A stretch of DNA of 64,000 nt from Scyliorhinus canicula (taxonomy: Eukaryota), in contig NC_052162.1 in NCBI RefSeq assembly GCF_902713615.1, positions 120,641,727 through 120,705,726 of the forward strand, in the 5' to 3' direction. A program made the position numbers and the translations under genes. The notes beneath the pieces were generated by a model, which ran no database searches, was not told where the DNA came from, and was given only the letters and a program-made list of their open reading frames with translations. This document shows, in pieces, positions 1-60,834 of this stretch (its first letter is position 1; every line of letters starts with the position of its first letter).

Positions 1-596
1 TTCTCCTGATTGTGAACAAGTTGGTGTCTTCTCAGGTTGGGTAAGTCATTGTATCCCTTTTCACACTGAGAGCAGGTGTATGGCTTCTCCTCAGCATGAA
101 CAAACTTGTGTCTCCGCAGATTAGATAAGTGAGTGAATCCCTTCTCACACTGAGAGCAGGTGAACGGCCTCTCCCCTGTGTGAACTCGCTGGTGTGCCCG
201 CAGGTTGATTAACTGACTGAATCCCTTCCCACACTGAGAGCAGGTGAACGGCCTCTCCCCAGCGTGAACTCGCTGGTGTATCTTCAGGCTGGACAACTGA
301 GTGAATCCCTTCCCACACTGAGAGCAGGTGAACAGCCTCTCCCCAGTGTGAATTCGCTGATGTAAATTCAGGCGAGATAACTGAATGAATCTCTTCCCAC
401 ACTGAGAGCAGGTGAACGGCCTCTCCCCAGTGTGAATTCGCTGATGTAAATTCAGGCTAGATAACTGCGCGAATCCCTTCTCACACTGAGAGCAAGTGAA
501 TGGCCTTTCCCCTGTGTGACTGCGTCGATGAATCTCCAGCTCTGATGGGGCTCTGTATCCCTTCCCGCAGTCCCCACATTTCCACCGTTTCTCCAT
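1..596 (-). CDS. C2H2 zinc-finger protein ZNF-A (at least 7 fingers; 3' end runs off the window)
   Basis: Manual translation from ATG at 596 gives [33 protein letters not shown]...CEKGYNDLPNLRRHQLVHNQE. Exact 84-nt periodicity (63,147,231,315,399,483,567) with no stop. Absent from the ORF track because it has no stop inside the window. Confidence 0.85.
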   Translation of the reverse strand, partial: MEKRWKCGDCGKGYRAPSELEIHRRSHTGERPFTCSQCEKGFAQLSSLNLHQRIHTGERPFTCSQCGKRFIQLSRLNLHQRIHTGERLFTCSQCGKGFTQLSSLKIHQRVHAGERPFTCSQCGKGFSQLINLRAHQRVHTGERPFTCSQCEKGFTHLSNLRRHKFVHAEEKPYTCSQCEKGYNDLPNLRRHQLVHNQE

Positions 597-1849
597 ATTT
601 TGGGTCTCCTCGAGTCTCTCCAGGGTGGACTATCAGTTGAAGTCTTGACCACACACAGAACACGTGTCTGGTTTCTCCCCGCTATGAAAGGTGCAATGTT
701 TTTTCAGGCTGTGCAACTGGTTAAAGCTCCTTCCACAGTCAGTGTGTGTGTCTCGGTGCTTTTCCAATCACAATGATGTTTAAAATCTTTTGAAGCCAAC
801 AGGTTGGGCAAACATTACTCCTTCTACATAATGGCTGATGAATCGAGTGACTGTCAGAACTAGATGTGATGTTTGAGATTTCGGTCTATAAATCCCATCC
901 TTTTTTTAACATCCTGTAAAAGGAGTTTACAAAAGACATCACTGTCAGTACAGGATAGAAAATCAGAACAGACTATTTTAATTTCTCTGGAACATTCTGT
1001 CCTCTCTCATTCCCCAAAAGCTGTAAATCTCCATCCCACACACTCTCTCTCCATTCTCACTCTGCTGTATCTAATATTCACCCTCCCAATTCTCCTGAAG
1101 GTGCTGATTCAGGCTGATTGACAGATCCATGCTCACTGCTTCCTGTCCTGGACACAGAGATCATAACAAACAGGAGCTGTAGTCGGCCATTCAGCCCATC
1201 GAGCCTGCTCAACCATTCAATGGGATCATTGGCCGATCTACATCAGCACCACTTTCCTACACTATGCCCCATATCCCTCGATATGTTCAATATCGAGAAA
1301 CATGTCAATTTCTGTCTTGAAAATACTTGATGACTGAGGCTCCACAGTCCTCTGGGGTAGAGAATTCCAAAGCTTCACTACATTGTCTTCAAATTCATTG
1401 AAGATCCCGGCCCCGTGTCACTGCCGTGTGGAGTCTGCACATTCTCTCCGTGTCTGCATGGTTCTCACCCCCACAACGTAAAACGATGTGCAGGGTCAGT
1501 GAAGTGGCGATGCTAAATTGCCTCTTAATTGGGAAAAAGAGAATTGGGTACACTGAATTTTTTTTTTTTTTAATTAATTTACAGGATTTGGGCGTCACTG
1601 GTTCGGCCAGTATTTGTTGCCCATCCCTAGTTGCCCTTCAGAAAGTGGTGGTGAGTGGCCTCCTTGCACACCCACTGTGCTGTTAGCGAGGGAGTTCCAG
1701 GATGTTGCCCCAGCGACAGTGAAGGACGGCGATATATTTCCAAGTCGGTCTGGTGAGTGACTTGGAAGGGAACCTCCAGGTGGTGGGGTTCCCAGGTATC
1801 TGCTGCTCTTGTCCTTCTAGATGGCAGTGGTCGCTTTGCTGAGCACCTT

Positions 1850-3072
1850 CGGTCTGAGCGCATTCAGGACCCTGACCTTCCCGTTGCTTGCCATTTTATT
1901 TATTTATTTATATAAATTTGGAGTACCGGGTTTTCCAAATAAGGGACAATTTTACCATGCCAATCCTCCCACTCTGCACATCTTTAGGTTGTAGGGGCAA
2001 GCACGGGGAAAATGTGCAGACTCCAAATGGACAGTGACCCAGAGCCGGGATCGAACCTGGGACCTCAGCACCGTGAGGGAGCAGTGATTAACCACTGTGC
2101 CACCGTCCTGTCCCTGCTTACCATTTTAACACAAGACCCTGCTCCCATGCCTGTCCTTGGCTTGTTGCAATGTCCCAGTGACGCTGAACGCAAACTGGAG
2201 AAACAGTAAATGTTCCGGTTAGGTACACTACAGCCTTCTGGTCTCAATATCGAATTCAAAAACTTCAGATAATTAACTCTACCCCACCTCAACCTCTTTG
2301 TTTTCATTCCATTTCATTTTAACTGTCCATTACCTGTTATTTCTTTCCTGTCTTTCTTCATAAAAATATATATTTCCCCCTCACTCTTTCCCCCTATCTT
2401 ATCCCCCCTTTCTTTACCTTTTGCTTCCCGCTTCCCCCCTTTTTCTCATTTTACCTCTCTCCCAACCATGCCCCCCTCCCCCCACATCTACATCTGTCAC
2501 AGCTTACCTTCTGATTTTAGTTTCTCTGCAGTTTGGTCTTTCTCACCTTTTATTCTCTCTGGGGACTGCCATAATAATCTTTATTTTTTTAATAATCTTT
2601 ATTGTCACAGGTAGAATTACATTAACACTGCAATTAAGTTACTGTGAAAAGCCCCTAGTCACCACATTCCGGCACGTGTTCGGGTACAAAGGGAGAATTC
2701 AGAATGTCCAAATGACCTAACAGCACATCTTTTGGGACTTTTGGGAAGGAACCGGAGAACCCGAAGAAATCCCACACAGACACGGGGAGAACGTGCAGAC
2801 TCCACACAGTGACCCAAGCCAGGAATTGAACCCGGGATCCTGCGCTGTGAAAATGCTAACCACTGTGTTACTGTGCTGCCCTTTCGTACTCTTTTCCCTT
2901 TGTTTCTGTAGTTATGACTGATCTTTCTTTCACTCGCCCTGCAGTATAAATATCTCCTACTGTCTATCCTTTTTACCTTTGATAAAGGGTCACCTGGACT
3001 TGAAAACATTAGCTCTTTTCTCTCCTCACAGGTGCTGCCAGACCAGCTGAGATTTTTCAGCATGTTCTCTTC
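1850..3072 (+). mobile_element. Penelope-like element 3' part (GIY-YIG C-terminus and tail), interrupted by two SINEs
   Basis: VACHF...VLGLLQCPSDAERKLE...FRLGTLQPSGLNIEF; tail gctgccagacc.gctgag. Related pieces at 45830-46310 (+) and 26440-26630 (-). Confidence 0.65.
2570..2882 (-). mobile_element. V-SINE variant with gtgacaataa tail (other copies near 6130-6350+, 19654-19930+, 46660-46775-, 49170-49420+, 55340-55725-, 56125-56298+)
   Basis: V-SINE head and core followed by cattctgaattctccc...gtggcgactagggg..ttttcacagtaactt...gtgacaataaag. Confidence 0.75.
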
Positions 3073-3221
3073 TGGAAATATGTAACGTAGCTACAGTACG
3101 ATATTACACAACAAAAAATAATAACAAATGTACTTTATTACACAACCAATAACATATCTAATCAGTACGATATAACAACACTACACTTATTACAATCCTC
3201 CATTAATTTACTGTCCCCTTA

Positions 3222-3750: not shown

Positions 3751-3751
3751 G

Positions 3752-8404: not shown

Positions 8405-8533
8405 TCAGATTCACCTGAGGAAGGAGCAGTGCTCTGAAAGCTCGTGTTTGAATGTTAACCTGTTGGACTTTAACCTGGTGTTGTAAGACTTCTTACTGCG
8501 CTCACCTCAGTCCAACGCCGGCATCTCCACATC
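8405..8533 (+). mobile_element. Penelope-like terminal repeat fragment
   Basis: cacctgaggaaggagc...gaaagctcgtg...aacctgttggactttaacctggtgttgt...ggcatctccacat. Confidence 0.6.
8412..8446 (+). ncRNA. Minimal type I hammerhead ribozyme motif
   Basis: CAC-CTGAGGA-A-GGAGC-AGT-GCTCT-GAAA-GC-TC-GTG: intact CUGAnGA and GAAA cores, stem II, palindromic AGCT stem III, and CAC/GTG stem I. Confidence 0.55.
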
Positions 8534-9790: not shown

Positions 9791-12496
9791 TAGTCTTGGC
9801 AGAATATAATGTCTTGTAAATTCTCAAAATTATAAAGTAATTTATTTTTTCAAACAAATTCTGATAGCTCTACAGTTTCTGAAAACATTTTTGTTGATGG
9901 TGTTATTTTCTGAAATAAAGTCTTTACAAAATAATTAACTAATACACCAATTCACTAATGATAATCAATGTTCACTGCTGAATAATCATTAATTTATTTA
10001 TTGCTTTTTGCTATGAAATCAATACACAATTAATATAGAAAAGGTACAGAAGGTGAAATGGCTGCAGGAAGCCACGTGTTAGAGGTATAAAAGGGCTGCC
10101 TTGACCTTGTTACTAATAACAGTGAATACACTATAAAAATAACAATTTTGAAACTAAATGTGATTACACATGCGCACTTACAGCTTCTTACATTACGACA
10201 GTGAATATATTTCCAAAAGTACGCCATTGGCTTTAAAACACTTTTGGAGGTCCAGTGGTAATGAGAGGTTTTATAGAAATGTACACTTGTTCCAATTGTC
10301 TGCAATCCAGGATATATTACACTCGGTGTCCTCACCAAGATCATTGATAAAGATTGAGTCTTAATTTTGTGTAATAACATCGTTGACACCATTTTGATAC
10401 TCTGTGAAACCCCAGACACATCATATGCACAATGTGTTGTTGTGACTTGGAATGCACTGTCTATAAATAGTGCTGAAATCTCATTGCACTGTAACTTCCA
10501 AAAGGGAATTTGATGCATTCTGAAAAAAAAGTCGAATAATGGGATTAAATGGATCGCTATCACAAAGAGCTGGCATAGGGAAAATGGGCCAAATAGACTC
10601 CTCTGTGCTCAAGGAGCCTTGTGTACATGTAAAACGAGTGGTAATGACCTGGAACCTACTGCCTATAAAGGTGGGAGATGCAGAAATGAGGGAAGGATTT
10701 CAACAGAACATTGGATGGGCACTGAGAGAAATCAACCTACAGGGATTCGGGGACAGAACGAGGCAATGGACAGACTGATTTGCTCCACAGAGAACCAACA
10801 TGGTCTCAAAGGGCTGAATGGCCCCATTCCCCACCGTCCAGATGCTGTGATCTCAGGAGAGAAATTCAGCTGCTCCAGTCACTCCAACTAACTGGAGTCC
10901 CTTATCCCTGGAGCCATTCTTGTAAATTTTCACAGTAACTTCACTGCAGTGTTAATGTAAGCCTACTTGTGACAGTAATAAAGATCATTATTGTAAATGT
11001 CCTCTGCAATCCAAGAACTTCACATCTTTCCTAAAGTGTGGCCATATATAAGGTTCCATTCCAGAGGGATAGAATTGAAAAGCAGGGAGGTTATGTTCAA
11101 CTTGTTTAGAGCCAGGGTCAGGCTACACTGGGAGCACTGTCAACATTTATCATCTCCATTTAGAAAAAGGAAATAGAGGCACTGGAGAAGGTGCAACAAA
11201 GATTCATAATATACAGAACTGAGAGCACTTAACACTCGGGAAAGGCTGGGGCTGCTTTTTTCTGGAAAAGAGAAGACTGATGGGTGACCTGATGGAAATC
11301 TTTCAGTTTTTGTGAAGGGATTCAATAATCCAACAGGAATTTCAGTAGAAACCGCTTTACCCAGCGAGTGGTGAGAATGTGGAACTCACTACCACAGCAA
11401 GTGGTTCAGGGGAACAGCATGAATCCATTGAACAGGAAGCCAGATACATACATGAGGGAGAAAGGAATAGAAAGAGATGCTGATGGGGGAGATGTCGAGG
11501 GGTGGGTGGAGGATCATGTGGAGCATAAATACAGCACAGACCATGGCTAACCTCAGCCGGTATGGGAATTTAACTTGTGCTGTTGGTGTCACTCAGCAGG
11601 AAACAGCCTTCCAGCCAACTGAGCTAACCCGATCCCTGTGTAAATCTGTAATAATTGCTTAAATATTACTGATTGTCTGTCTCACACCATACTATTTAAT
11701 GTAGTTTCCCAGTGCCCCTCAGACAACTTGCCCTTCATATCTGGATAGTTTCCTTCTGTGAGAAGCACCAAGATAAATTAAACAAAAGAACCATGAAACC
11801 ACCATAGCCCATCTTCAAGGCAATGTGGCATGATTTTTGGGTTTACAAACAGAAATAGTAATGTAACATCTTCTAATCTCCAAACATCCTTTCACTCTTT
11901 GATCCTTGTGAAATGTGAAACCAGATATTCGCAAGAAGGCTCAGAGAGAATCAGCCCACTGGAGGCGAAGTCGTGAGACCGGCCAGTCCAGCAGAAGGAA
12001 ACCCTCTGACCATCCCCATTGACCAACAGAATGAAACAAATGCAGTCCTGGATATAATTGACAACAGAAATAATAACAGCAGAATCCAATCCCTGTAATC
12101 AGTTGTGAACTTGTTGGTGTCTCAGAAAGTGCACTGAAGTGGGCAGCATGGTGGCGCAGTGGTTAGCATTGCTGCCACACGGCGCCGATGTCCCAGGTTC
12201 GATCCCGACTCTGGGTCACTGTCCGTGTGGAGTTTGCACATTGTCTCCATGTGGAGACAACTTCTCCCTGTGTTTGCGTGGGTTTTGCCCCCACTACCTA
12301 AAGATGTGCAGGGTAGGTGGATTGGCCATGCTAAATTGCCCCTTAATTGGAAAAAATGAATTGCGTTCTCTAAATTTCTATATAAAAAAAAAGTGCGATG
12401 AATTACAAAACCTCGTCACACATTGAGTGCAGGTGAATGGCCTCTCCCCAGTATAAACTCCCTGTTGTGACTGCAGATGGCATAACCGAGTGAATC

Positions 12497-14775: not shown

Positions 14776-15642
14776 CTAAGAGCAGGTGAATGGTCTCTCC
14801 CCAGTGTGAACTCGCTGGTGACTCTGCAGGTTGGATAACTGAGTGAATCCCTTCCCACACTGAGAGCAGGTGAATGGCCTCTCCCCTGTGTGAACTCGCT
14901 GATGTGTCCGCAGGTTGGATGAATCTTTGAATCCCTTCCCACACTGAGAGCAGCTGAACGGCCTCTCCCCAGTGTGAACTCGCTGGTGTACCCGCAGTGT
15001 AGATGAATCTTTGAATCCCTTCCCACACTGAGAGCAGGTGAATGGCCTCTCCTCTGTGTGAACTCGCAGGTGTGTCTGCAAGCTGGATAACTGACTGAAT
15101 CCCTTCCCACACTGAGAGCAGGTGAATGGCTTCTCCCCAGTGTGAACTCGCTGGTGTCTCAGCAGGGTGGATAAATCAATAAATCCCTTCCTACACTGAG
15201 AGCAGCTGAATGGCCTCTCCCCAGAGTGAACTCGCTGGTGTGTCTGCAGGTTGGATAACCAAGTGAATCCCTTCCCACACTGAGAGCAGATAAATGGCCT
15301 CTCCCCAGTGTGAACTCGCTGGTGTCTCCGCAGGGCGGATGAATTAATGAATCCTTTCCCACACTGAGAGCAGGTGAATGGCCTCTCCCCAGTGTGAACT
15401 CGCTGGTGTGTCTGCAGGTGGGATAACTGAGCAAATTCCTTCTCACACTGAGAGCAGGTGAATGGCTTCTCCCCAGTGTGAACTCGCTGGTGTGTCTGCA
15501 GGTGGGATAACTGAGCAAATTCCTTCTCACACTGAGAGCAGGTGAATGGCTTCTCCCCAGTGTGAATGCGGCGATGAATCTCCAGCTGAGATGGGACTCT
15601 GTATCTCTTTCCACAGTCCCCACATTTCCACGGTTTCTCCAT
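14776..15642 (-). CDS. C2H2 zinc-finger protein ZNF-B (10 fingers)
   Basis: ORF 14776..15678. The true ATG is MEKPWKC at 15642 (the track start is TTG directly after an in-frame TGA). TGE(K/R)PF linkers; fingers 2 and 3 are identical in protein; ends CS-TAG. Confidence 0.85.
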
Positions 15643-16424
15643 GTTTTGTGTCTCCTCTTGTCTCTCCAGATTGGACAATCAGTGGAAGCCTTGTCTACAC
15701 ACAGAACATGTGCACTGTCTCTCCTCACTGTGAATGGTGCGATGTTTTTTCAGACCGTGTAACTGGTTAAAGCTCTTTCCACAGTCCGTTCACTGGAACA
15801 CTCACTCGGGTGTGTGATGTGTGGGTCTCGGTGCTTTTCCAGTCACACTCACGTTTAAAATCTTTTGAAACCGGCAGATCGGACAAACATTTCTCCTTCT
15901 CGCCGACGATATTCAGAGCCCGGTGATATTCAGATCAGAAGGAATCAAGTGAGTTTGTCACATCGAGACGTGATGTTTGAGATTTCTGTCTATAATTCCT
16001 CCTCTTCCAATATTCTTTAAAAACAATTGACAAAAGTCACTATTGTTAGTACAGGATAGAAATTCAGAACAGACAGTTCTAGTTCCTCTGGACCATTCTT
16101 TCCTCTCTTGTTCTCTAAATGCTGTAAATCTCCATCCCACACAATCTCCCTCCATTCTCACTCTGCTGTATCTAATATTCACCCTCCCAATTCTCCTGAT
16201 GGTGCTGGTTCATGTTAATTGACAGATCCAAGCTCAGCTCACTGCTTCCTGACCAGCAGAGCCATTAGAACAGGAGTAAGAGTCGGCCATTTGGCCTACC
16301 GAGTCTGCTCAACCATTCAATGAGATCCTTGACCGATCTACCTCAGCCCCAATTTCCCACACGATCCCAATATCCCTTGATATATTCAATATCTAGAAAC
16401 CTATCAATATCTGTCTTATTTTTT

Positions 16425-17784: not shown

Positions 17785-18610
17785 CAGAGAAACCAGAATT
17801 GTCTGTTCAGAATTTCTATCGTGGATTGACAGTGATTACTTTTTTTTTAAATTACAAAAAAATTAAATTTAGACTACCCAATTCTTTAGTCCCCCCGATT
17901 AAGGAGTAATTTTAACATGGCCAATTTACCTACCCGCACATCTTATTGGATTGTGGGGGCCAGACCCACACAGACACGGGGAGAACATGCAAACTCCATA
18001 TGGCAGTGGCCCGGTATCAATCCCAGGTCCTCGGTTAACCACTGTGCCACCGTACCTGCCCCTATAGTGTTGACTTTTGTGAACTCCTTTTACTGGATAT
18101 TACAAGGGGAGTATTTACAGATAGAAACTCAAATTAAACTTCACATCAAGATTTAACAGAGTCACTCCATTCATCAGGACTTGAATATCATTGGCCTGTG
18201 AATGTGGAAGAAGAAATGTTTGTCTGTTCTGTCTGCAGGAAAAGATTTTCAAGATCAGTGTGACTGAGAAAAACCCCCGATACACACACACATGACTCGA
18301 GTGAGAGTGTTCCAGTGAACTGACTGTGGAAAGAACTTTCACCAGTTACACAGTCTGAAAAAACATCACACCATTCACAGCGGGGAGAGGCCGTACATGT
18401 GCTCTCTATGGGGACAAGACTTCAACTAATCGTCAAACGTGGAAAGCGACAAGGGCACCAGCAGCATGCTGAAACTATAGAAATATGGGGACTGTGGGAA
18501 GGGATTCAGATCCCCATGTGAGCTGGAGACTGATCACCATAATCATACCAGCGACAAACCATTCACCTGTTCTGAATGTGGAAAGGGATTCACTCAGTTA
18601 TCCCAGTGAG
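17785..18610 (+). pseudogene. ZNF pseudogene fragment (last intron, 5'UTR, about 1.5 fingers)
   Basis: Family intron motif (gaattgtctgttcagaatttctatc), uORF and UTR homology, then ATG CTG AAA CTA TAG (stop) and Cys>Tyr; truncated at about 18610 by L1-like sequence. Confidence 0.75.
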
Positions 18611-18614
18611 GATT

Positions 18615-22810: not shown

Positions 22811-22814
22811 TAAG

Positions 22815-23594: not shown

Positions 23595-25307
<1,713 letters not shown>

Positions 25308-26380
25308 TCACCATCTGAGCTGGAAATTCATCGACGCTGTCACACTGGAGAGAGGCCATTTACCTGCTCTCAGTGTGAGAAGGGATTCAGTGATTCATCC
25401 AACCTGCGGTCACACCAGCGAGTTCACACTGGGGAGAGGCCATTCACCTGCTTTCAGTGTGGAAAGTGATTCACTCAGTTACACCATCTGCCGGCACACC
25501 AGCGAATTCACACTGGGGAAGGACCATTTACCTGTTCCACGTGTGGGAATGGATTCAGTAATTCTTCCCAACTGCTGACACACCAGCGACTTCACACTGG
25601 AGAGAAACCATTTACCTGCACCGTGTGTGGGAAGGGATTCACTCATTTATCCAGCCAGTGGAGACACAAAGTCACTCACACCAATGAGAGACCCTTTAAA
25701 TGCTCTGACTGTGGGAGCAGCTTCAAAAGCTCTCGAGAAGTGATGTACCAACAGCACATTCACACCGAGGAGAGACCGTTCAGCTGCTCTCAGTGCACAA
25801 AAAAGTTTAAAAGGTCCTCCAACCTGCGGGAACACCAGCGAGTTCACATGGGGGCGAGGCCGTTCACCTGCACAGTGTGTGGAAAGGGATTCTCTCGGTC
25901 ATCCCATCTGCTGAGACACCAGCGAGTTCACATGGGGGCGAGGCCGTTCACCAGCTCAGTGTGTGGAAAGGGATTCTCTCGGTCATCCCATCTGCTGAGA
26001 CCCAGGGAGTTCACATGGGGGCGAGGCTGTTCACCTGCACAGTGTGTGGAAAGGGATTCTCTCAGTCATCCCATCTGCTGAGACACCAGCGAGTTCACAT
26101 GGGGGCGAGGCCGTTCACCTGCACAGTGTGAGGAAAGGGATTCTCTCAGTCATCCCATCTGCTGAGACACCAGCGAGTTCACTCGTGATGACGGAGTTTG
26201 GATTCTATTCCTTTAGCTGCTGGTAATCACATCCAGGACTGAACCATGTTCATTCTGCCACTTGGGGAAGTGGGAGGGTCGGAGGGTTTCTTTTTGCTGG
26301 ACTGGCCGGTCTCACCACTTTGCTTCCAGTGGGCTGATGCTCTTTGAGCCTGGGAGAGCACATTTCCACTGAAATGATCC
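25308..26380 (+). pseudogene. 5'-truncated ZNF gene (about 10 fingers, stop and frameshifts) plus family 3'UTR
   Basis: Starts mid-finger ([10 protein letters not shown]); GGA>TGA at 25467; frameshift near 26000; partial ORF 25623..26081; conserved 3'UTR block at 26200-26380. Confidence 0.8.
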
Positions 26381-32633: not shown

Positions 32634-33332
32634 CTAAGAGCAGGTTAACGGCTTCTCTCCAGTGTGAACTTGCTGGTGTCTCTGCAGGTTGGATAACCGA
32701 GTGAATCCCTTCTCACACTGAGAGCAGGTGAAAGGCTTCTCCCCAGAATTAACTCGCTGGTGTGTCATCAGGCTTGATGAAGTCATGAATCCTTTCTCAC
32801 AGTGTGAGCAATTGAATGGCCTCTCTCCAGTGTGAACTCGCTGATGTATCTGCAGGCTCGATGAAGTAGTGAATCCCTTCTCACACTGAGAGCAGGTGAA
32901 CGGTCTCTCCTCAGTGTGAACTCGCTGATGTATCCGCAGGTCAGATGATTGAATAAATCCCTTCCCACAATGAGAGCAGTGGAATAGCCTCTCCCCTGTG
33001 TGAACTCGCTGATGTATCTGCAGGCTCGATGAAGTAGTGAATCCCTTCTCACACTTTGAGCAGGTGAATGGCCTCTCACCAGTGTGAACTCGCTGGTGTT
33101 TCAGCAGGTTCGATGAATGAGTGAATCCCTTCCCACACTGAGAGCAGGTGAACGGCCACTCCCCAGTGTGAACTCGCTGGTGTATCCGCAGGTCGGATGA
33201 TTGAGTGAATCCCTTCTTACACAAAGGACAGTTGAACGGCCTCTCCCTAGTGTGACTGCGCCGATGAACTTCCAACTGAAATGGGGCCCTGAATCCCTTC
33301 CCACAGTCTCCACATTTCCACCGTTTCTCCAT
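32634..33332 (-). CDS. C2H2 zinc-finger protein ZNF-E (8 fingers, 7th with His>Asn)
   Basis: ORF 32634..33368, ATG of MEKRWKC at 33332; tandem C2H2 repeats with TGERPF linkers. Confidence 0.85.
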
Positions 33333-34049
33333 GTTTTGGGTCTCCTCTTGTCTCTCCAGATCGGACAATCAGTTGAGGCCTCGTCCACATACAGAGCACG
33401 TGTACGGTACCTCCCTGCTGTGAACGGTGTGATGTTTTTTCAGGCTGTGTAACTGGTTCAAACTCTTTCCAAAGTCAGTGCTCTGGAACACTCTCACTCG
33501 GGTGTGTGTGTCTCGGTGCTTTTCCAGTCACACTGATGGTTAAAATCTTTTGAAACTGAAAGAAAAGACAAACATTTCTCCTTCTAGATTCAAAGGCCGA
33601 TGATATTCAGTTCCAGGGAATTGAGAGACTCAGTCAGATTGAGACGTGACATTTGAGATTTCTGTCTCTAATTCCTCCACTTCTAATACCCTGTAAAAAC
33701 AATTTACAAAAGACATCACTGTCAGTACAGGATAGAAATTCAGAACAGACAATTCTAGTTTCTCTGAAATATTCTTTCCTCTCTCATTCCCCAAAAGCTG
33801 TAAATCTCCATCCCACACATTCTCCCTCCATTCTCACTCTGCTGTATCTAATATTCACCCTCCCAATTCTCCTGAAGGTGCCGATTCAGGCTGATTGACA
33901 GATCCATGATCACTGTTTTCTGTCCTGGAAACAGAGATCATAAAAACTAGGACCTGCAGTTGGCCATTCAGCCCATCAAGCCTGCTTGTCTATTCTGTGG
34001 GATCATTGGCCGATCGATGTCAGTGACATTCTCTGTGTTACTGACCAGA

Positions 34050-35700
34050 GGCTGAGTGTGCTGACTCAATATCTGTGAGTTCATGAGGCCGAGCTGTAAA
34101 ACACCATGAAGAGGCTCAATGATCCGGAGGAGAGAATCCTGAACATTGAGCAAGATGCCTCCTCGGTGAGGCAAGAATTTAATCCTTGGAAAACCGGCTG
34201 AGTGGGGTGGTGGACTCCTGGGGAACTTGGAGAACCGAGGGTCAGAGAAAGAACATCCAAGTAGTCGGCCTGCTAGAAGGTGTGGAGGGTAAGGATCCCG
34301 TTAGGTTCTTTGAGGACCGGCTGCCACGTTTTCTCCAGCTGGATGTGAAGCCTGGGTGTTTTAAATTAGAAAGGGCATCGGATCCTGTCTTTGAGGCCGA
34401 GGGATAGTTTTCATCCCAGGCCTGGAATCATTCCCTTCCACAACTTGAAAGATCAGCAGAAGGTCCTGGAGACGGGTATGGTGAGGTGGGACCTGGCTCC
34501 ATGAGGGAATGAGGATTTCCTTCTTCCAGGACTTTTCGGCAGCCACACAAACGAAGCATCGAGGCTTCGATGAAGTTTGAAGGGAACTCAAGGCTGCGGG
34601 AGTGAATTACGTCGCTTTATCCTGTGACCCTGAAAATTGTATCTGACAATCCGTCAAGTCTTTCGATAATCCGACTACTGCCTTGGCCTTAACTAAATCC
34701 ATGAAGGGCAAGGATTGGAGTGATGATTTGCAGCTGATGGTTAAAATATTTTGAATCCGACAGAAAAGACAAACATTTCTCCTTCCAGATTAAAAGGCCG
34801 GTGATATTCAGTTCCAAGGAATTGAGAGACTGTCAGATCGAGATGTGAAGTTTGAGATTTCTGTCTGTAATTCCTCCTCTTCTAATATCCTGTAAAAACA
34901 ATTTAACTCAGGCTCTAATCCGGACTCTTTCCCTATCATGGTGTTGTTGTCTGAATTTGTTATCTTTTATCCTGTTGAAGAGAGTTGTTATTCTCTGAGC
35001 ACCGATTGAATGTCATCTTCTCCTCGAGTGTTACAGGGACTCGTATTATCTTATCTCAGTTATGGTAGATGTGCCGTGTGCTGATTATCCGTCGTCTTTC
35101 TTCTATTATCCGAGTGTTAATCATGGCAGAACCGAGTGGTGCCATTGCCGAGGGGTGGATGGTGGTGGATGCAGGTCTTCACGGGTGGGTCTAAAATGTG
35201 GGAGGGACATTCGATCCCCATTCCCTTGTTGGCCCTTCTTTTCTTCTCCCCATTTCGGAGAAGGTATCCTGAGGGTAACAACAGTCTGGCCGTGGGGTTA
35301 ATCCTCCGGGTCCTCAATCTTATTGAGGAATGTCCCCATGGATCTATAGTGGTGGTGATTCTTTTGTATTTTTGTTATTATGGGAGGGTTTATGTGTTGT
35401 TGACTTTATCCTACTCTGGTACAGACGGGGCTTTTATCCGTGAAAGGAGCAGTTTGGGGAAACTTTGGTGCCTCTGGTGTAAAGTGAGTTGGAGGAGGGA
35501 GTAATGGCACACGCCCGATTGTGGCGTGAAAATCTGTTCCTGTTCTCTCTGTCGCCTAACTAATAGCGGCAGTTAATCTGCAAATTTTCTCAGGGAATGT
35601 ACGGGGCATCCATCACCCTATCAGAAGGAAAAAGATCCTCTCCTTTCATAAGGAGAAAGTCGACATAACCTTAGTGCAGAAAACTCAGCCTATTCTGGGA
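34050..35700 (+). mobile_element. Old L1: ORF1 remnant, spacer and start of ORF2 (resumes near 36200-36550)
   Basis: RKNIQVVGLLEGVEGKDP...KLERA; decayed endonuclease start (aatgtacggggc...ttagtgcagaaaactca). Confidence 0.7.
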
Positions 35701-38140: not shown

Positions 38141-38149
38141 TTTCATAAT

Positions 38150-39115: not shown

Positions 39116-39169
39116 AACTGCCCCACCGCCGCTGTTCTGTTCCAGGGAGCGGGCCACTTTCTGATTGAA

Positions 39170-42785: not shown

Positions 42786-43009
42786 GGAGGACCAGAGGAG
42801 GAGCAGACCAGGGGTCTCCAAAGGGGACAACTCAGGGAGAGAAACTCACTCCATCACCCAACAGACCCTCCGCCCGACCCAATAAACACAGCTACTCCTG
42901 CCCTGCCCTCGCCCATCAAGTGACCACTGCCACTCCCAGGCAGCCAAGAGAATATTGAAGATGACAAGTGGAACAAGGATTAACTGACCACACCCAGTTC
43001 CTCGTGCTC

Positions 43010-43410
43010 ACTAGTCCCCTTGGGTCTCTCGTGTTTTTGGGACGATTTCTGTATATTCCTCTGTGAAGACAGACACGCATTGTTCAGTTTCTCTGACATG
43101 TCCTTATTCCCCATTATAAACTCTCCTGTCTCTGCCTGGAATGGACCCACAATGGTCTTTGCTAATCTTTTCCTTTTCACATTCCTATCGGAGCTTTTCC
43201 TGTCGGTTTTTATGTTTCTCATCAGTTTGATCCCATATTCTATTTTCTCTTTATCAGTTCCTCCTTTGCTGAATTCTAAATCAATCACCAATCCACAGGC
43301 ATATGGCTATTTTGGCCACTTTATGAGCCTCTTCCTTTGATCTAATGGAATCCTTAAATTTTCTCGTTAGCCACAGTTGCATCACTTTTCCTGTGGCTTT
43401 TTGTTCCTTA
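43010..43410 (-). mobile_element. CR1-like fragment paralogous to 31300-31700
   Basis: ORF 42980..43291; nearly the same sequence and flank as the copy downstream of ZNF-E. Confidence 0.75.
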
Positions 43411-44016
43411 AAGCAGTCAACATTTGATGTCAACATCTAATAATACCTTAGAAATTAGTGATTGCCTGTCTATTGTCATACCTATTGTTGTAATGTCCCA
43501 AACTACCACAGACAACTTGCCTTTCAAACCTTGACAGTTTTCTTTGTGAAAAACACGTGGATAAATTAAACAAAGGAACCATGTAACCATCATAGCCCAT
43601 CTTGGCAAGGTGGCATGCTTTCAGAGGTTCCAAACAGAAATGGGAACGACATATCTTCCAACCATCAAACACCCTTTCGCTCTGTGATCCTTGTGAAAGT
43701 TGAAGCCAGGAATTCACAACCTGGCTCAATGATCATCAGCCCACTGGAGGCAAATTTGTGAGACCAACCAGTCCAGCAGGAAGAAACCCTCCGCCCATCC
43801 TTATTGATCAACTGACAGAATTAACACAATGCAGCCCTGGATGCAATTGAGAGCAGAACAGCGGAATCCAACCCCTGTAATCAATTGTGAACTTGGTGTG
43901 TGAGCATGTGCGATCAAACACAAAATCTCTCCCACACGGAGAGCAGGTGAACGGCCTCTCCCCAGTGAGAACTTGGCAGTGTGTCCGCAGTTGGGATGGA
44001 TCACTGAATATCTCAC

Positions 44017-44970
44017 CTACTCAGAGCAGGTGAACGGCCTCCCCCCAGTGTGAACTCGCTGGTGTGTTCGCAGGTTGGATAACCAAGCAAATCTCTTCCC
44101 ACACTGAGAGCAAGTGAACGGCCTCTCCCCAGTGTGAACTCGCTGGTGTGACTTCAGGCTGGATGACTGAGTGAATCCTTTCCCACACTGAGAGCAGTTG
44201 AACGGCCTCTCCCCAGTGTGAACTCGCTGGTGGCTCTGCAGGTGGGATAATCGAGTGAATCCATTCCCACATTGGGAGCAGGCGAATGGCCTTTCCCCAG
44301 TGTGAACTCGCTGGTGTGTCCGCAAACTGGATATCCGAGTGAATCCCTTCCCACACTGAGAGCAGGTGAACGGCCTCTCCCCAGTGTGAATTTGCAGATG
44401 ATTCTGCAGGGCGGATGAATGTCTGAATTTCTTCCCACACTGAGAGCAGGCGAACGGTTTCTCTGCAGTGTGAATTCGTTGATGTGTCCGCAGGTTCCAT
44501 AAGTGAGTGAATCCCTTCCCACACTGAGAGCAGGTGAACGGTCTTTCCCCAGTATGAACTCGCTGGTGTGCCCGCAGTTGGGAGAACTGAGTGAATCCCT
44601 TCCCACACTGAGAGCAGGTGAATGGCCTCTCCCCAGTGTGAACTCTCTGGTGTGTCTGCAGGGTAGATGAATGACTGAATCCCTTCCCACACTGAGAGCA
44701 GGTGAATGGCCTCTCCCCAGTGTGAACTCGCTGGTGTGTCTGCAGGGCGGATAACCGAGTGAATCTCTTCCCACACTGAGAGCAGATGAATGGCCTCTCC
44801 CCAGTGTGAACTCGCTGGTGTTTCTGCAGGTCAGAGAATTGAGTGAATCCTTTTCCACACTGAGAGCAGGTGAATGGCCTCTCCCCAGTGTGAATGCGCC
44901 GATGAATTTCCAGCACAGAAGGTGCTGTGAATCCCTTCCCACAGTCCTCACATTTCCATGGTTTCTCCAT
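44017..44970 (-). CDS. C2H2 zinc-finger protein ZNF-F (11 fingers)
   Basis: ORF 44017..45006, ATG of MEKPWKC at 44970; intact CxxC...HxxxH repeats. Confidence 0.9.
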
Positions 44971-46774: not shown

Positions 46775-47645
46775 ACTCTGGGGAAACCAACCCTTTTAAT
46801 TGTGAACATTAGGAAAGAGACCGCCCTTTTAGCCAGACAAATAAATGTGTCAAGCAGAGGGAGCAAAGGATGTCAATGTGTTTGAGAGAGAGAGACGTGG
46901 GCCAAGTTTTCCAGAGTCTGCACCCTCCCTGGATTCACTTCCTTTCCCTTCAGTTGCTGCAAGTGACCAATGGAAGGTGAGAATGAGAAAAGAAATTGAA
47001 AGGGGGAGAAAAGAAAGTGTTTTACTCACAGATGTTGGAGACAGGAAGAAGTTTCCGTCTGTGTCATGGTCAAAGTTCATTAACACAAGGTCTGCCTTCT
47101 GATTGGCTGGAGGACAATAGTCCTTCTGGTCCTCCCAGTTTCCCATTGGTCAACACCTCAGCAGGGAGGTCAGGGGGTGGGCCTTCCTCCACACATGCGC
47201 AGCTTCCCCTCACCCTTGGACATGCGTAGTACCTGATCACCCGCCCGTGCGGCGGATAGAGCGTTTTCCCCAGCGCGGGGGATTCTGGGACCTTCGGCCG
47301 ACACTCTCCAAACTCCTGGGTTTGGGATGAAAAGTGGAGGGGGGCAGTGACCTCACCCTGACACAAAGCACATGTTGGTAGTCACGGGAATTGATTGTGA
47401 CGTTCGCCCTTAGCACCTGGAGAGGGCAATGGGTGAGAGTGAAACTGAAGCCGAGAGTCAGCATCTTCACGGGAGGAGATTTGGGGAAATGCAGGAGGAC
47501 AGAAGGATAAATTAGTGTTAAAATCAATAGTGAGGAGAGCATGTGTGAGGTTCAGATATTTATAGTTTGAGAGGAAGAATTATTTTCTGTGATAACTAGG
47601 ATTGTCAGTTTTGAATTTCTATTCTGTAATCACAGTGATGACTTT
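46775..47645 (-). promoter_or_regulatory. Bidirectional promoter and 5' exon cassette for ZNF-F
   Basis: Same cassette; CATGCGCA and ATTGG motifs; the opposite arm continues into plus-strand ZNF intron homology (47590-47645) before a SINE. Confidence 0.7.
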
Positions 47646-49424
47646 AATAAAAAAATTATATATATTTAGAGTACTCAATAATTTTTTGCCAATTAAGGGG
47701 CAATTTAGCATGGCCAATCCACCTAACCTGAACATCATTTTGGGTTGTGGGGGCAAGACCCACGCAGACACGGGGAGAATGTGCAAACTCCACATTGTCA
47801 GCGACCCACGGCCGGGAGTGAACCTGGGTCCTCAGCATTGTGAGGCAGCAGTGCTAACCACTATGCCACCCTGATGATGTCAATCCTATCACATCCATTA
47901 AAGTCTCTATCAGGTCAGTCTTCAACCTTCTCTTCCCCAGGGGAAATATCCCCAACCTGTTCAATCTCTCCTGAAACTTAAACACTCTCAGTTCTGATAT
48001 CATCCTTGTTGGTCTTGCACATCGTGGAGGTCCTATCTCTGTTTTAAAGGGTATATAATTAATATTTAGATTCAGTTTAATTTGGTTGAAGTGTCTTATT
48101 TACTCAGTTCCAAAATGACCCTCTAAAATGCCTCAATTCGAAAGAGGCTTAACAATCAGGCAAGAGAGGACTCTCAAATGTCAAATGTTTATTTCTTTAA
48201 AAGCAGTATACTGATGAAGTACACGAGTGACGTTCATCACCTCAATTGGGTGACCTGCCCTGGGAGAAGTGTGAATCTTCTTCAGGTTCCTGAACCAACA
48301 GTGATTTCCCAAAATCCTGCCCAGGAGCACTCAGTGTCTCCACGACTAGAGTCCAACTTACAAAGCCCAAGATCACTCACAAATCCCACTTTGACCTCTT
48401 GAATTAATATTACCTCATCTTGAATCAGACCTGTTGTAATCAGACAATTGGTCATTATTGTCACTGGGTTAATTTTATTGGATTTAACCATTGATGTAAA
48501 TTGTTCCGTGGAGCAGAACAATGGGACTGTTCAGGATTTCCCTATTATCTGAGTTTAGACAAGATCATGAACGGTTTGCATCGAGTAAATGAAGAGAAAC
48601 TGTTTCTACTGACAAATGGTTTGTTAACCAGAGGACACAGATTTAAGGTAATTCACACAGAAGCCAGAGGGGAAATGAGGAAGATGAATCTTTACACAGT
48701 GAGGTGTGATCCGGAATGCACTGCCTGACAGGCTGGTGGAAGCAGATTCAACACAGGGAGTTGGATAAATTTTAGAAAGGGACTAGCTTTCAGGGAAAGG
48801 ACAGGATGGTGGGACTAATTGAGTAGTTATTTCAAAGAGCCAGCACAGGCATGATGGGCCGAATGTCCTCCTGTGCAGTGCGATTCTGTGATCAAAGATA
48901 AATAAATGTGTGTCTGCAATATGTACAGTGATGTCAATAATGTCTGGAATTCTCTTTTCCTTCCAATTTGATTTTAGACAAAAGAGAACAGAAGCAAATG
49001 GCTTTCAGTACATTGACCAGCCCCGATGTTACACAGAGGGGTAAAGGGGTGGATTCTCAGACCAGCGAGTCAAGGCAGCCCCTTTAAATGGCCAGTTCCC
49101 ACACTGTAACCACTGAAGGGAAGCAGCCTCGGTCCATACTGGGAGCTCCTGCCGTCCCCATCAGCTGGCTCGCGCCAGGGACCCGGGTTCGATTCCCAGC
49201 TTGAGTCACTGTCTGTGCAGAGTCTGTACATTCTCCCAGTGTCTGCATGGGTTTCCTTCGGGTGCTCCAGTTTCCTCCCACAAGTCCCGAAAGACGTGCT
49301 TGTTAGGTGAATTCGACATTCTGAATTTTCCCTCACTGTACCCGAACAGGCACCGGAGTGTGGCGATTACGGGATTTTCACAGTAACTTTATTGCAGTGA
49401 TAATGGAAGCCTACTTGAGATTTT

Positions 49425-50005
49425 TATTTTTAGGTGCGATGAATTATTGAATCTCTTTCCACAGTCAGAGCAGGCAAACGGCCTCTCGTCAGTATGAACT
49501 CGCTGGTGTGTCCACAGGCTGGATGGAACATGGAATCCTTGCCCACACAGAGGAGCAGAATGGTCACACCCTGGTGTGAATGTGCCGATGAGTTTCCACT
49601 GTCGATGGACAACTCAATCTCGCTGGTGTCTCTGCAGTGCAGATGACCTTCTAAACTTCTTTGTGCAGTGAGAGCAGCTAAATGCGCTCTCCCCGGTGTG
49701 AATGCACTTGTGCATTTCCATTGTTTCCTGCTGTCTCTTCGGGTAAGACAATCAGTTGAAGGCTCACACAGAATACGTGTACCGTCTCTGCCCGCTGTGA
49801 TGGTGCAATGCTTTTTCAGGCTCTTTCCAGAGTCAGAATCAGGAACACTCTCACTCGGGTGTGTGTCTCAGTGCTTTTCCAGTCACACTGATGTTGAAAA
49901 CATTTTGAAGCACAAGGAATAATAAAACATTGCTCCTCCTGGATTTAAAAGCCATTGTTCTTCAATGAATTGAGTAACGTTGTCAGATTTTGATGTGAAG
50001 TTGAT
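49425..50005 (-). pseudogene. Heavily deleted ZNF pseudogene
   Basis: Finger remnants (tgaactcgctggtg), FN-TGA motif near 49752, and 5'UTR homology to about 50005, where L1 sequence begins. Confidence 0.75.
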
Positions 50006-57335: not shown

Positions 57336-57339
57336 AAAC

Positions 57340-58895: not shown

Positions 58896-59222
58896 AATTT
58901 TATATTGGACAGAGATATATGGAATGTATTATATATATTATTGATGGTTCTGTAGTAAAATACATGCATTATCTTTTCTAGTTTTGTAATATAGTACTGT
59001 ACCTACATTATTTCGAATCACCCCATCTCTAATCTGTAAATATACTTAGATGGAGATTCTCTACTCTTCTACAGGTTGTAATGAGTTTAGATTTGTTGAT
59101 CAGCATCAATCAGTACCTTCATAAGAATTGGGAGGGGAAGGAAGTGAATCCATTCTGTATATTACACACATTTGTTGTCCAGTAACATAGACATATATCT
59201 GTCTGGCAGCCTCTGTGTCCAG

Positions 59223-59288
59223 GACAAGAAGCAGTGAGCAGGGATCTGTCAATCAGCCTGATTCAGTGCCTTCAGGAGAATTGGGAGG
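59223..59288 (+). other. 66-nt non-coding exon of ZNF-H (paralogous exons near 1082-1147, 16185-16250, 33858-33925, 45497-45562 on minus strand)
   Basis: tgtgtccAG|GAC...GGGAGG|GTgaat; the following short intron ends tttttgcAG at 59459; sequence conserved in every paralog. Confidence 0.6.
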
Positions 59289-59796
59289 GTGAATATTAGA
59301 TACAGCAGAGTGAGAATGGAGGGAGAGTGTGTGGAATGGAGATTTAGAGCATTTGAGGGAAAGAGGGAGAGCGAACAATGTTCGATAGAAACTAGAATTG
59401 TCTGTTCTGAATTTCTATCCTGTACTGACATTAATGATTTTTGTAAAATCTTTTTGCAGGAAGTTAGAACGAGAGGAGTTTGAGGTGGATATCTCAAACA
59501 AAATATCATGTCAAGAACTGACTGAGTCACTCAGATCTTGGGAGTCGAATATCATCAGCCTTTGAATCTAGAAGGAGAAATGTTTGTCTATTCTGTCTGC
59601 TTCAAGAGATTTTAAACATCAGTGTGACTGGAAAAGAACTGAGACACACACACCCATGTGAGATTGTTACAGAGCACTGACTGTGGAAAGAGCTTTAATC
59701 AGTTATACAGCCTGAAAAACACATCACACCATTCACAGCAGGGAGAGACTGTATAGGTGTTCTGTGTGTGGATGAGGCTTCAACTGATCGTCCAAC

Positions 59797-60834
59797 ATGG
59801 TGAGACACAAGATCACCCGGATCATGGAGAAACCATGGAAATGTGAGGACTGTGGGATGGGATTCACAGCCCCGTGCCAGCTGGAAAGTCATCAACGCAG
59901 TCACACTGGAGAGAGGCCTTTCACCTGCTCTCAGTGTGAACAGGGATTCGCTGCCATAGGAAACTTGCGGAGACACGAACGAGTTCACAGTGGGGAGAGG
60001 CCATTCACCTGCTCTGACTGTGGGAAGGGATTCACTGAGTTATACAGCCTGCAGGGACACCAGCGAGTTCACACCGGGGAGAGGCCATTCACCTGCTCTC
60101 AGTGTGAGAAGGGATTCACTCATTTAACCAATTTGCAGAACCACCAGCGAGTTCACACTGGGGAGAGGCCATTCATCTGCATTGTGTGTGATAAGCGATT
60201 TGCTCAGTTATCCAGCCTGCAGACACACCAGCGGCTTCACACTGGGGAGAGGCCATTCATCTGCTCTGTGTGTGATAAGGGATTCACTCAGTTATCCAAC
60301 CTGAAGACACACCAGCGGCTTCACACCAGGGAGAAGCCATTCATCTGCTCCGTGTGTGATAAAGGATTCACTCAGTTATCCAGCCTGCAGACACACCAGC
60401 GACTTCACACTGGGGAGAAGCCATTCATCTGCTCCATGTGTGATAAGGGATTCACTCGGTTATTCAACCTGAAGAAACACCAGAGCGCTCACACCAGGGC
60501 GAGGCCATTCATCTGCTCTGTGTGTGATAAAGGATTCACGCGATTATCCAGCCTGCAGACACACCAGCAAGTTCACACCGGGGAGAAGCCGTTCATCTGC
60601 TCTGTGTGTGATAAGGGATTCACTCAGTTATCCAGCCTGCTGAAACACAATGTCAATCACACCAATGAGAGACCCTTTAAATGCTCTGACTGCAGAAAGG
60701 GTTTCAAAAGTTCACAGTTACTGATGTCCCACCAGCGCGTTCACTCTGAGGAGAGACCGTTCAGCTGCTCTCACTGCACAAAGAGCTTCAGAACCTCATC
60801 CAACCTGATCAGACACGAGCGAGGTCACACCTAA
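59797..60834 (+). CDS. C2H2 zinc-finger protein ZNF-H (12 fingers)
   Basis: 345-aa ORF; family-typical MEKPWKC start at 59824 (extra in-frame ATG at 59797); stop lies at the junction with a Rex1-like LINE. Confidence 0.9.
   Translation: MVRHKITRIMEKPWKCEDCGMGFTAPCQLESHQRSHTGERPFTCSQCEQGFAAIGNLRRHERVHSGERPFTCSDCGKGFTELYSLQGHQRVHTGERPFTCSQCEKGFTHLTNLQNHQRVHTGERPFICIVCDKRFAQLSSLQTHQRLHTGERPFICSVCDKGFTQLSNLKTHQRLHTREKPFICSVCDKGFTQLSSLQTHQRLHTGEKPFICSMCDKGFTRLFNLKKHQSAHTRARPFICSVCDKGFTRLSSLQTHQQVHTGEKPFICSVCDKGFTQLSSLLKHNVNHTNERPFKCSDCRKGFKSSQLLMSHQRVHSEERPFSCSHCTKSFRTSSNLIRHERGHT

What the first reader, a model, noticed from the sequence alone, without database searches (positions are those of the whole stretch)
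1..60834. Cassette-built family of effector-less C2H2 ZNF genes in rapid birth-and-death among transposons
Seen: at least nine paralogous units share promoter, small non-coding exons, intron, 5'UTR and 3'UTR blocks. The proteins start directly at MEK(P/R)WKC and consist only of 7-12 fingers. No KRAB, SCAN or BTB-like exon is visible. Known: tetrapod KRAB-ZNF clusters and lineage-specific fish ZNF families have this organisation and silence TEs. Inference: this may be an independent chondrichthyan TE-surveillance family acting without a covalently attached repressor domain, for example by steric block or by recruiting partners through fingers.
Basis: partly seen in the sequence, partly recalled or inferred. 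Interest (0 to 1): 0.7.

Follow-up and report, generated by a model that had tools for sequence, protein, structure and literature searches.

The report
Catshark fingers-only zinc-finger gene cluster
This stretch of small-spotted catshark DNA holds a real but old cluster of DNA-binding zinc-finger genes that encode only fingers; about half the copies are dead, and nothing here shows that they police transposons.

Summary
The window carries five paralogous units with open finger arrays (A, B, F, H, J) and five or six dead or fragmentary copies, set among LINE, SINE-like and hAT-like repeats. The intact units share an ~0.8-kb upstream block. B, F and H also share a 3' block.

The proteins start at MEK(P/R)WKC and contain only C2H2 fingers. 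That Met sits in a former TGEKP linker. The "5'UTR" is three fossil fingers with shared stop codons, one of them a TGA 39 nt before the ATG in every unit.

No KRAB or SCAN sequence was found anywhere in the window. Pfam found no effector domain in the proteins or in ten upstream ORFs.

The ORFs are under selection. Paralogue dS is 0.30-0.55 and framework omega is 0.25-0.6. Variability peaks at helix positions -1, +3 and +6. Neutral drift would leave each ORF open about 1% of the time or less.

A 52-nt upstream core is almost invariant in six copies.

Other windows of this scan reported the same shark family. This is a new variant of a known kind.

The parts
3..596 (-). Unit A: open finger array, MEKRWKC start at 596; at least 7 fingers; the 3' end is cut by the window edge
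597..1148 (-). Unit A upstream block: fossil-finger leader 597-913, candidate intron 914-1060, 52-nt core 1044-1095, block start about 1148. A LINE 3' tail lies at 1149-1381
14779..15642 (-). Unit B: 288-aa ORF with 10 fingers. Fingers 2 and 3 are 98.8% identical in DNA, a recent duplication within the array
15643..16249 (-). Unit B upstream block: leader 15643-16014 (uORF 15855-15890, TGA at 15679-15681), candidate intron 16015-16161, core 16145-16196
11649..12452 (-). Unit B 3' block, separated from the stop codon by a ~2.3-kb insertion (12453-14761) that holds a LINE piece
17795..18605 (+). Unit C: dead copy head-to-head with B. It has a leader, three decayed fingers and about 1.5 fingers, with stops at the same places as the other units
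23595..25307 (-). Unit D: dead copy. Fingers with a stop at 23595-24347, a 576-bp insertion at 24348-24923, upstream block 24924-25307, core 25238-25289
25311..26351 (+). Unit E: dead array with an in-frame stop and a frameshift, abutting D's core head-to-head. It carries the 'KCSDC..FKSS' finger pair and part of the 3' block
31299..32446 (-). Unit F 3' block, shared with H and B
32637..33332 (-). Unit F: 232-aa ORF with 7 canonical fingers and 1 degenerate finger, MEKRWKC start
33333..33925 (-). Unit F upstream block: leader 33333-33690 (uORF 33540-33575), candidate intron 33691-33837, core 33821-33872
34734..34905 (-). Fragment G: 90%-identical copy of part of F's leader (33533-33706), about 1.2 kb upstream of it
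42995..43898 (-). Unit H 3' block. Decayed fingers continue after the stop codon at 43886-44013
44020..44970 (-). Unit H: 317-aa ORF with 11 fingers. Exactly this product is a called single-exon gene on NCBI GCA_902713615.2
44971..45564 (-). Unit H upstream block: leader 44971-45329 (uORF 45180-45215, TGA 45007-45009), candidate intron 45330-45476, core 45460-45511, decamer CTGTCAATCA at 45531-45540. A LINE tail lies at 45565-45781
47594..47795 (+). Fragment K: copy of C's upstream part, head-to-head with H
49429..50002 (-). Fragment I: about 2 fingers (49429-49598) and a piece of leader (49733-50002)
59222..59823 (+). Unit J upstream block: core 59275-59326, candidate intron 59310-59459, leader 59460-59823 (uORF 59580-59615, TGA 59785-59787). 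There is an extra partial copy of the 5' core at 59071-59136
59824..60831 (+). Unit J: 336-aa ORF with 12 fingers, ending in the 'KCSDC..FKSS' finger pair

Best explanation
This is part of a large, old cluster of Krueppel-type C2H2 zinc-finger genes specific to sharks and rays. It grew by duplication of ~2.8-kb units and is slowly decaying among later transposon insertions. Five units still encode proteins made only of 7-12 fingers.

The finger-only state appears to be derived. The ancestor of this subfamily had at least three more N-terminal fingers. These decayed before the local duplications and now form a ~360-nt leader carrying shared stop codons and a conserved 11-codon uORF. Translation starts at a Met that arose in a former TGEKP linker, in a strong Kozak context.

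An almost invariant purine-rich element of 52-115 nt lies about 480-600 nt upstream of the ATG. It most likely drives or starts transcription (inferred). A ~147-nt intron may follow it (inferred from donor, branch-point and acceptor motifs).

The proteins most likely act as sequence-specific DNA binders with differing specificities. Their targets and their way of acting without an effector domain (occupancy or competition, or partners recruited through fingers) are not shown.
For: Units and shared blocks.

Start in a former linker, the TGA 39 nt upstream in all five units, and further shared stops in decayed fingers.

Only finger families in Pfam. No KRAB or SCAN in 2588 ORFs of the window. 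No domain in ten same-strand upstream ORFs. No match to the N-termini of shark or ray relatives beyond the leader and fingers.

Selection: dS 0.30-0.55, framework omega 0.25-0.6, contact-site omega 0.4-2.5. Entropy peaks at helix positions -1, +3 and +6, with Cys, His and Leu invariant. In a neutral simulation each ORF stays open in 0.4-1.3% of runs at K = 0.15 per lineage.

Core: six copies with at most one mismatch and 0 expected; 100% identity over 60 columns, against 57-69% in the adjoining leader.

Main ATG has A at -3 and G at +4 in all units, and the uORF is conserved.

The exact H product is a called gene in the S. canicula assembly.

Probable RNA runs from several studies hold 29-45% of the words of H's 3 kb and 53-59% of its leader, against 61-72% in DNA runs.

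Proteins with the same [12 protein letters not shown] start are annotated in Mustelus, Pristiophorus and Chiloscyllium, and the same dead leader shows in a Cetorhinus protein.
Against: No reads could be laid, so the TSS, the intron, the poly(A) site and the contiguity of leader and CDS in one RNA are not shown. The RNA nature of the holding runs is the tool's guess.

The leader has 3-5 upstream ATGs. No AATAAA or ATTAAA lies within 1.5 kb downstream of H, B or J.

Only H's product is on record as a gene; those of B, F and J are not.

Finger-by-finger alignment between paralogues may not be orthologous, so dN/dS is approximate.

Gene conversion could contribute to the identity of the core. The dead copy D keeps the core too.
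Confidence: 0.7

Rival explanations
1. One reading: the proteins are a TE-surveillance repertoire. Each paralogue binds a transposon family and silences it without an attached repressor domain, in an arms race.
For: Variability is concentrated at the DNA-contact positions, and the contact fingerprints differ between paralogues. ZNF numbers track TE load across metazoans, and fish FiNZ-ZNFs repress TEs (PMC10547256). Human finger-only ZNF146/OZF and ZNF507 bind LINE-1 (PMC8896011). The catshark genome is 68% TE with active LINEs (PMC11979771). A recent finger duplication in B shows that the arrays still change.
Against: There are no binding, chromatin or expression-timing data. The paralogues here are old (dS 0.30-0.55), older than several TE copies between them, which are 90-94% identical to each other. 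Contact-site omega scatters around 1 rather than clearly above it. In the OZF study, loss of ZNF146 did not broadly de-repress L1.
Confidence: 0.25
2. The genes are not effector-less. An unseen upstream coding exon, possibly short like FiNZ, is spliced in frame just before MEK, or an alternative isoform carries an N-terminal domain.
For: Annotated relatives have longer N-termini: S. torazame P0145 with ~200 acidic residues, Heterodontus P0151, and ray proteins P0039 and P0097. FiNZ is only 28 aa and invisible to Pfam. AG dinucleotides exist in the 39-nt window.
Against: The in-frame TGA 39 nt upstream is present in all units, and no pyrimidine tract precedes those AGs. tblastn with the relatives' N-termini hits only the leader and fingers in the window. 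Three relatives read the same leader DNA in three different frames, so these extensions may be annotation artefacts. The P0145 N-terminus has no recognised domain and a poorly confident model. The called H gene is a single 954-nt coding exon.
Confidence: 0.07
3. The units are relics. They are transcribed or silent pseudogenes whose ORFs are open by chance or through homogenisation by gene conversion, and no protein is made.
For: The leaders are long with 3-5 uATGs, and no canonical poly(A) hexamer lies downstream of H, B or J. Half of the copies are visibly dead. Only one of four complete ORFs is a called gene.
Against: Neutral simulation gives about 1% or less per ORF and far less jointly. 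Framework omega is 0.25-0.6. Zinc ligands are invariant in 45 fingers. The main ATG has a strong Kozak context in all five units.
Confidence: 0.06

Closest known systems
Tetrapod KRAB zinc-finger (KZFP) gene clusters
   Same: Tandem clusters of poly-C2H2 genes with the array in one exon. They evolve by duplication and decay, vary at helix positions -1, +3 and +6, and are embedded in repeats.
   Different: There is no KRAB exon and no coding sequence at all before the first finger. Papers report KRAB-ZNFs as absent from cartilaginous fishes (PMC8455134, PMC11603059). TRIM28-type silencing is neither shown nor expected.
Cyprinid FiNZ-ZNFs (Wells et al. 2023, PMC10547256)
   Same: A lineage-specific fish ZNF expansion that arose independently of KRAB, with a two-part gene (a small upstream exon plus an array exon).
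   Different: FiNZ genes encode a conserved 28-aa N-terminal domain on the upstream exon. Here the upstream sequence is non-coding, and TE repression has not been tested.
Human ZNF146/OZF ('only zinc fingers') and ZNF507 (PMC8896011)
   Same: Proteins made of about 10 C2H2 fingers with no other recognisable domain. These two bind LINE-1 sequences, which shows that a finger-only protein can target TEs.
   Different: They are single conserved genes, not a multi-copy cluster. Orthology is neither expected nor tested. Their loss did not broadly de-repress L1.
The shark and ray finger-only ZNF family reported by other windows of this scan (s1-236521, s1-200271, s1-203735, s1-253617, s1-198233, s1-213844)
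   Same: Same genome, four of the six on the same chromosome piece 2.9-6.7 Mb away. Same finger-only architecture and constant first finger ([21 protein letters not shown]). About half of the copies are dead.
   Different: Those windows stress head-to-head pairs around shared promoters. Here the intact genes are mostly single and co-oriented (A, B, F and H all on the minus strand), with only dead head-to-head partners (C, K, E).

Membership tests
Krueppel-type C2H2 poly-zinc-finger proteins | Tandem C-x2-C-x12-H-x3-H fingers joined by TGE(K/R)P-type linkers | tested here: met
   56 regex fingers in the window, 45 of them in the five open ORFs. Cys, His and Leu are invariant and the linker is HTGE(R/K)PF. 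Pfam zf-C2H2 E = 1.9e-70 and zf-H2C2_2 E = 1.3e-96.
KRAB-ZNF (KZFP) | N-terminal KRAB A box encoded on an upstream exon | tested here: not met
   No PF01352 hit in H or J. A KRAB HMM built from 33 sequences has a best hit of E = 1.5 in 2588 window ORFs, while controls score 1e-24 to 1e-35. An in-frame TGA lies 39 nt before the ATG.
KRAB-ZNF (KZFP) | Recruitment of TRIM28/KAP1 and H3K9me3 | not testable with these tools
   No chromatin or interaction data.
SCAN-ZNF | N-terminal SCAN domain | tested here: not met
   The Pfam lists lack PF02023. An HMM of the pre-finger N-terminal regions (up to 220 aa) of 11 SCAN-flagged proteins has a best hit of E = 9.4. No positive control was run for this model.
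BTB/POZ-ZNF | N-terminal BTB domain | tested here: inconclusive
   No BTB hit in H, J or ten upstream same-strand ORFs. Short exons were not scanned with a BTB model.
FiNZ-ZNF | Conserved 28-aa acidic N-terminal FiNZ exon; cyprinid fishes only | tested here: not met
   The proteins have only 5 residues before the first Cys, with stops upstream. The organism is a shark. No FiNZ model was available to scan with.
Shark and ray finger-only ZNF family with a constant first finger (earlier scan notes) | First finger [27 protein letters not shown] followed by a variable array | tested here: met
   All five units have it, with 79-87% DNA identity in finger 1. The same finger heads or precedes the arrays in Mustelus, Pristiophorus, Chiloscyllium, Heterodontus, S. 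torazame, Cetorhinus, Mobula, Stegostoma and Hemitrygon proteins.
Shark and ray finger-only ZNF family with a constant first finger (earlier scan notes) | Copy number over 1000 genome-wide | not tested
   No shark genome collection could be searched with these tools.

The most novel reading that the evidence does not exclude
The near-invariant upstream core, the leader of fossil fingers and the conserved 11-codon uORF together form a shared control module. It switches on, and translationally gates, a whole shark-wide repertoire of finger-only DNA binders at one stage such as the germline or early embryo. These proteins then restrain LINEs by occupancy alone. That would be a TE-control system that arose independently of KRAB and FiNZ and needs no repressor domain.
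Probability: 0.12. Interest if true: 0.65.

Novelty: new variant of a known kind. Interest (0 to 1): 0.38.

Why it matters
Cartilaginous fishes have very TE-rich genomes and no KRAB-ZNF system, so how they recognise transposons at the DNA level is open. A large, selected family of finger-only ZNFs is an obvious candidate, and I found no description of it in the papers I could search.

This window adds three points. The finger-only state here arose by decay of N-terminal fingers. Selection still keeps the arrays open. A short upstream element is far better conserved than the coding sequence.

It does not show what the proteins bind. As a cluster it is ordinary duplication and decay of a familiar gene type.

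Tried and rejected
The Rfam scan stopped at 46500, and ORFs overlapping those places were left out of the Pfam calls. Local scripts read the whole window file only for an ORF/HMM scan.

Exact-protein look-ups: the four products are not in the clustered collection. B, F and J, including J's 345-aa form, are not on record as genes.

Whole-protein homology search: swamped by generic vertebrate ZNFs. It was useful only to show that the chondrichthyan hits carry no KRAB.

Rfam on 1-46500: no family.

RNA fold of the core block: z = +1.27, so no structured RNA.

Findings search by sequence and by several words: blank.

ESM Atlas on the acidic N-terminus of S. torazame P0145: only generic ZNF clusters and a low-confidence model.

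An inverted-repeat scan of the core failed because I gave the wrong strand, and I did not repeat it.

Considered and set aside:
- The core is part of the adjoining LINE. Rejected, because LINE copies elsewhere end at their natural 3' end without it.
- The GTAAGT in H at about 45411 is the donor. Rejected, because it is not conserved in the other units.
Full report
WHAT IS THERE. A regex scan of all six frames finds 56 C2H2 fingers grouped in seven arrays. Five arrays are open reading frames that begin at MEK(P/R)WKC:
- A, 3-596(-), cut by the window edge, at least 7 fingers
- B, 14779-15642(-), 288 aa, 10 fingers
- F, 32637-33332(-), 232 aa, 7 canonical fingers plus one degenerate
- H, 44020-44970(-), 317 aa, 11 fingers
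- J, 59824-60831(+), 336 aa, 12 fingers

Two arrays are dead. D (23595-24347, -) has a stop. E (25311-26351, +) has a stop and a frameshift. Self-comparison of the window and a search with unit H add fragments C (17795-18605, +), G (34734-34905, -), K (47594-47795, +) and I (49429-50002, -). So 'at least nine units' is right only if fragments are counted; five look intact.

Between the units lie a LINE reverse transcriptase (RVT_1 at 52129-52599 and 57882-58268), many copies of a LINE 3' tail and of SINE-like repeats, and a hAT-like pair of ORFs at 26910-28717. By the scan's notes and the one gene on record, the genome is the small-spotted catshark, assembly GCA_902713615.2.

SHARED BLOCKS. 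The five intact units align over about 0.8 kb upstream of the ATG.

Identity is uneven. A stretch of about 115 nt is nearly invariant, and 60 consecutive columns are identical in all five units. The leader next to it is only 57-69% identical. A 52-nt piece of this core occurs six times in the window with at most one mismatch, against none expected. The sixth copy belongs to dead unit D.

The core is purine-rich and has no unusual RNA fold (z = +1.27). It matches no Rfam family in 1-46500.

Inside and after the core lie three splice-like motifs:
- an invariant GTGAG donor-like site
- a TACTGAC or TACTAAC branch-like site
- a T-rich tract ending in AG, present in all five units

These would define an intron of about 147 nt. 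That is inference from motifs only.

Upstream of the block in A, B, F and H lies the natural 3' end of a LINE in the same orientation.

Downstream, a block of 0.46-1.1 kb is shared by B, F and H. In B it is pushed away by a 2.3-kb insertion.

THE PROTEINS HAVE NOTHING BEFORE THE FIRST FINGER. Reading upstream of the ATG shows that the start Met sits where a TGEKP linker used to be (...QN-MEKPWKC). The preceding sequence is a decayed finger with an in-frame TGA exactly 39 nt before the ATG in all five units. Two more decayed fingers lie further up, with shared TAA and TGA stops and a lost first Cys. The more diverged dead copy C carries the same stops.

The leader (317-372 nt if the candidate acceptor is used) holds 3-5 upstream ATGs. 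One opens an 11-codon uORF, MFVxSxxFKRF-stop, conserved in all five units. The main ATG has A at -3 and G at +4 everywhere. I had reached the first independently and checked the second.

Tests for an effector domain were negative:
- Pfam finds only zinc-finger families in H and J.
- A KRAB model that I built from 33 KRAB-ZNF hits scores nothing better than E = 1.5 on 2588 stop-to-stop ORFs of the window. KRAB controls score 1e-24 to 1e-35.
- A model of the pre-finger N-terminal regions of 11 SCAN-flagged proteins finds nothing (best E = 9.4).
- Ten long same-strand ORFs upstream of the units have no domain except a weak RT.

Exactly the 317-aa H product is on record as a single 954-nt coding exon in the NCBI assembly. 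The B, F and J products are not on record.

ARE THE ORFS ALIVE? Paralogue dS is 0.30-0.55. Omega is 0.25-0.6 at framework positions and 0.4-2.5 at positions -1, +2, +3 and +6. The caveat is that fingers aligned by position may not be orthologous.

Across 45 fingers, Cys, His and Leu never vary, and entropy peaks at -1, +3 and +6 (2.8-2.9 bits). The contact fingerprints differ between paralogues.

Under neutral substitution at K = 0.15 per lineage an ORF of this size stays stop-free in 0.4-1.3% of simulations. Four complete open ORFs, plus A, are therefore not chance.

The arrays still change. Fingers 2 and 3 of B differ at 1 of 84 nt, and F4/F6 are 94% identical.

Gene-level duplication in this window is old, however. 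Several TE copies between the units are 90-94% identical to each other, so they are younger than the gene duplicates. 'Birth and death' fits. 'Rapid' does not, at least here.

EXPRESSION. After that I worked beside those places.

The run index gives indirect evidence. Eighteen catshark runs from seven studies have small contig sets, which the tool guesses to be RNA. They hold 29-45% of the sampled words of H's 3 kb. Such runs hold 53-59% of the words of the leader and core stretch 44971-45560, against 61-72% in DNA runs. If these runs are RNA, the fossil-finger leader is transcribed, which fits a leader-plus-array mRNA. The TSS, the intron and the 3' end are not shown. No AATAAA or ATTAAA lies within 1.5 kb downstream of H, B or J.

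RELATIVES. Annotated proteins of Mustelus, Pristiophorus and Chiloscyllium start with the same [13 protein letters not shown] Cetorhinus protein reads through the same dead leader. Heterodontus, S. torazame and ray proteins have the constant first finger preceded by a degenerate finger and longer N-termini. None of the chondrichthyan hits I examined carries KRAB in its precomputed Pfam list.

tblastn with those N-termini hits only leader and finger sequence in the window. Three relatives read the same leader DNA in three different frames, so some of the extensions are probably annotation artefacts. The acidic N-terminus of S. torazame P0145 has no recognised domain.

The finger-only state of this cluster is therefore most simply a derived, N-terminally decayed form of an old shark and ray family.

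COMPARISON WITH WHAT IS KNOWN.
- Lineage-specific poly-ZNF expansions that track TE load are described across metazoans, and FiNZ-ZNFs repress TEs in zebrafish (PMC10547256).
- KRAB-ZNFs are reported absent from cartilaginous fishes (PMC8455134; PMC11603059).
- Human ZNF146/OZF and ZNF507 consist only of fingers and bind LINE-1. Loss of ZNF146 did not broadly de-repress L1 (PMC8896011).
- The catshark genome paper does not mention zinc fingers, and my searches found no paper on this shark family.
- Other windows of this scan have reported the same family, four of them on this same chromosome piece 2.9-6.7 Mb away. Those notes are leads, not evidence. Here I confirmed the constant first finger and the roughly one-half share of dead copies.

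VERDICT. The exon and intron labels and the word 'rapid' are not established. The effector-less coding capacity is well supported for these genes. TE surveillance is plausible by analogy but untested.

It is a new variant of a known kind: a finger-only ZNF cluster produced by secondary N-terminal decay, with an unusually conserved upstream core. It is of moderate interest and was already met several times by this scan.

Noticed in passing
window 1149-1381, 16250-16413, 33926-34023, 45565-45781: In A, B, F and H the natural 3' end of a LINE, in the gene's orientation, abuts the conserved upstream block. The length of LINE tail kept differs between units. This could be one old insertion copied with the unit. 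It could also hint that units spread by LINE 3' transduction.
   Followed up: partly
window 1115-1124, 33892-33901, 45531-45540, 59246-59255 (B: 16216-16225 with one change): The decamer CTGTCAATCA lies about 20 nt upstream of the 52-nt core. From memory, its reverse complement TGATTGACAG equals the PBX-MEIS heterodimer consensus. That is a lead only.
   Followed up: no
window 15394-15540: Fingers 2 and 3 of unit B are 98.8% identical in DNA (1 of 84 nt differs). This is a very recent one-finger tandem duplication inside an otherwise old gene.
   Followed up: yes
window 26910-28717 (-): Two adjacent ORFs of 273 and 267 aa. One has a Spin-doc-type zinc finger (PF18658, E = 2.5e-10) and a weak DUF4371 match. 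This looks like a hAT-type transposase gene, or a domesticated relative, split by a stop or frameshift.
   Followed up: partly
window 21800-23100 and 38000-40100: GC-rich blocks (56-58% GC) with long overlapping ORFs in several frames and no Pfam hit. One ORF, 21793-22299(-), has a CCHC-like motif (GHIRRNCP), possibly a retroelement ORF1 or gag.
   Followed up: partly
window 59071-59136: Unit J has an extra partial copy (79% identical) of the 5' part of the conserved core, about 150 nt upstream of its own core.
   Followed up: no
window 43886-44013: Finger-like sequence continues after H's stop codon. The ORFs of B, F and H all end just inside the next finger (...[10 protein letters not shown]-stop), so the 3'UTR also begins with fossil fingers.
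   Followed up: partly
They lie in a SINE/LINE-tail-like repeat upstream of unit H. Nothing was laid, and no letters of these places were sent to search tools afterwards.
   Followed up: no
units A, B, F, H versus J, E, D: There are two array types. A, B, F and H (all on the minus strand) are homogeneous CSQC(G/E)KGF fingers. J, E and D carry C(S/T)VC fingers and a 'KCSDC..FKSS...ERPFSCS.C.K.F' finger pair that also occurs in Pristiophorus, S. torazame, Mobula and Stegostoma proteins.
   Followed up: partly
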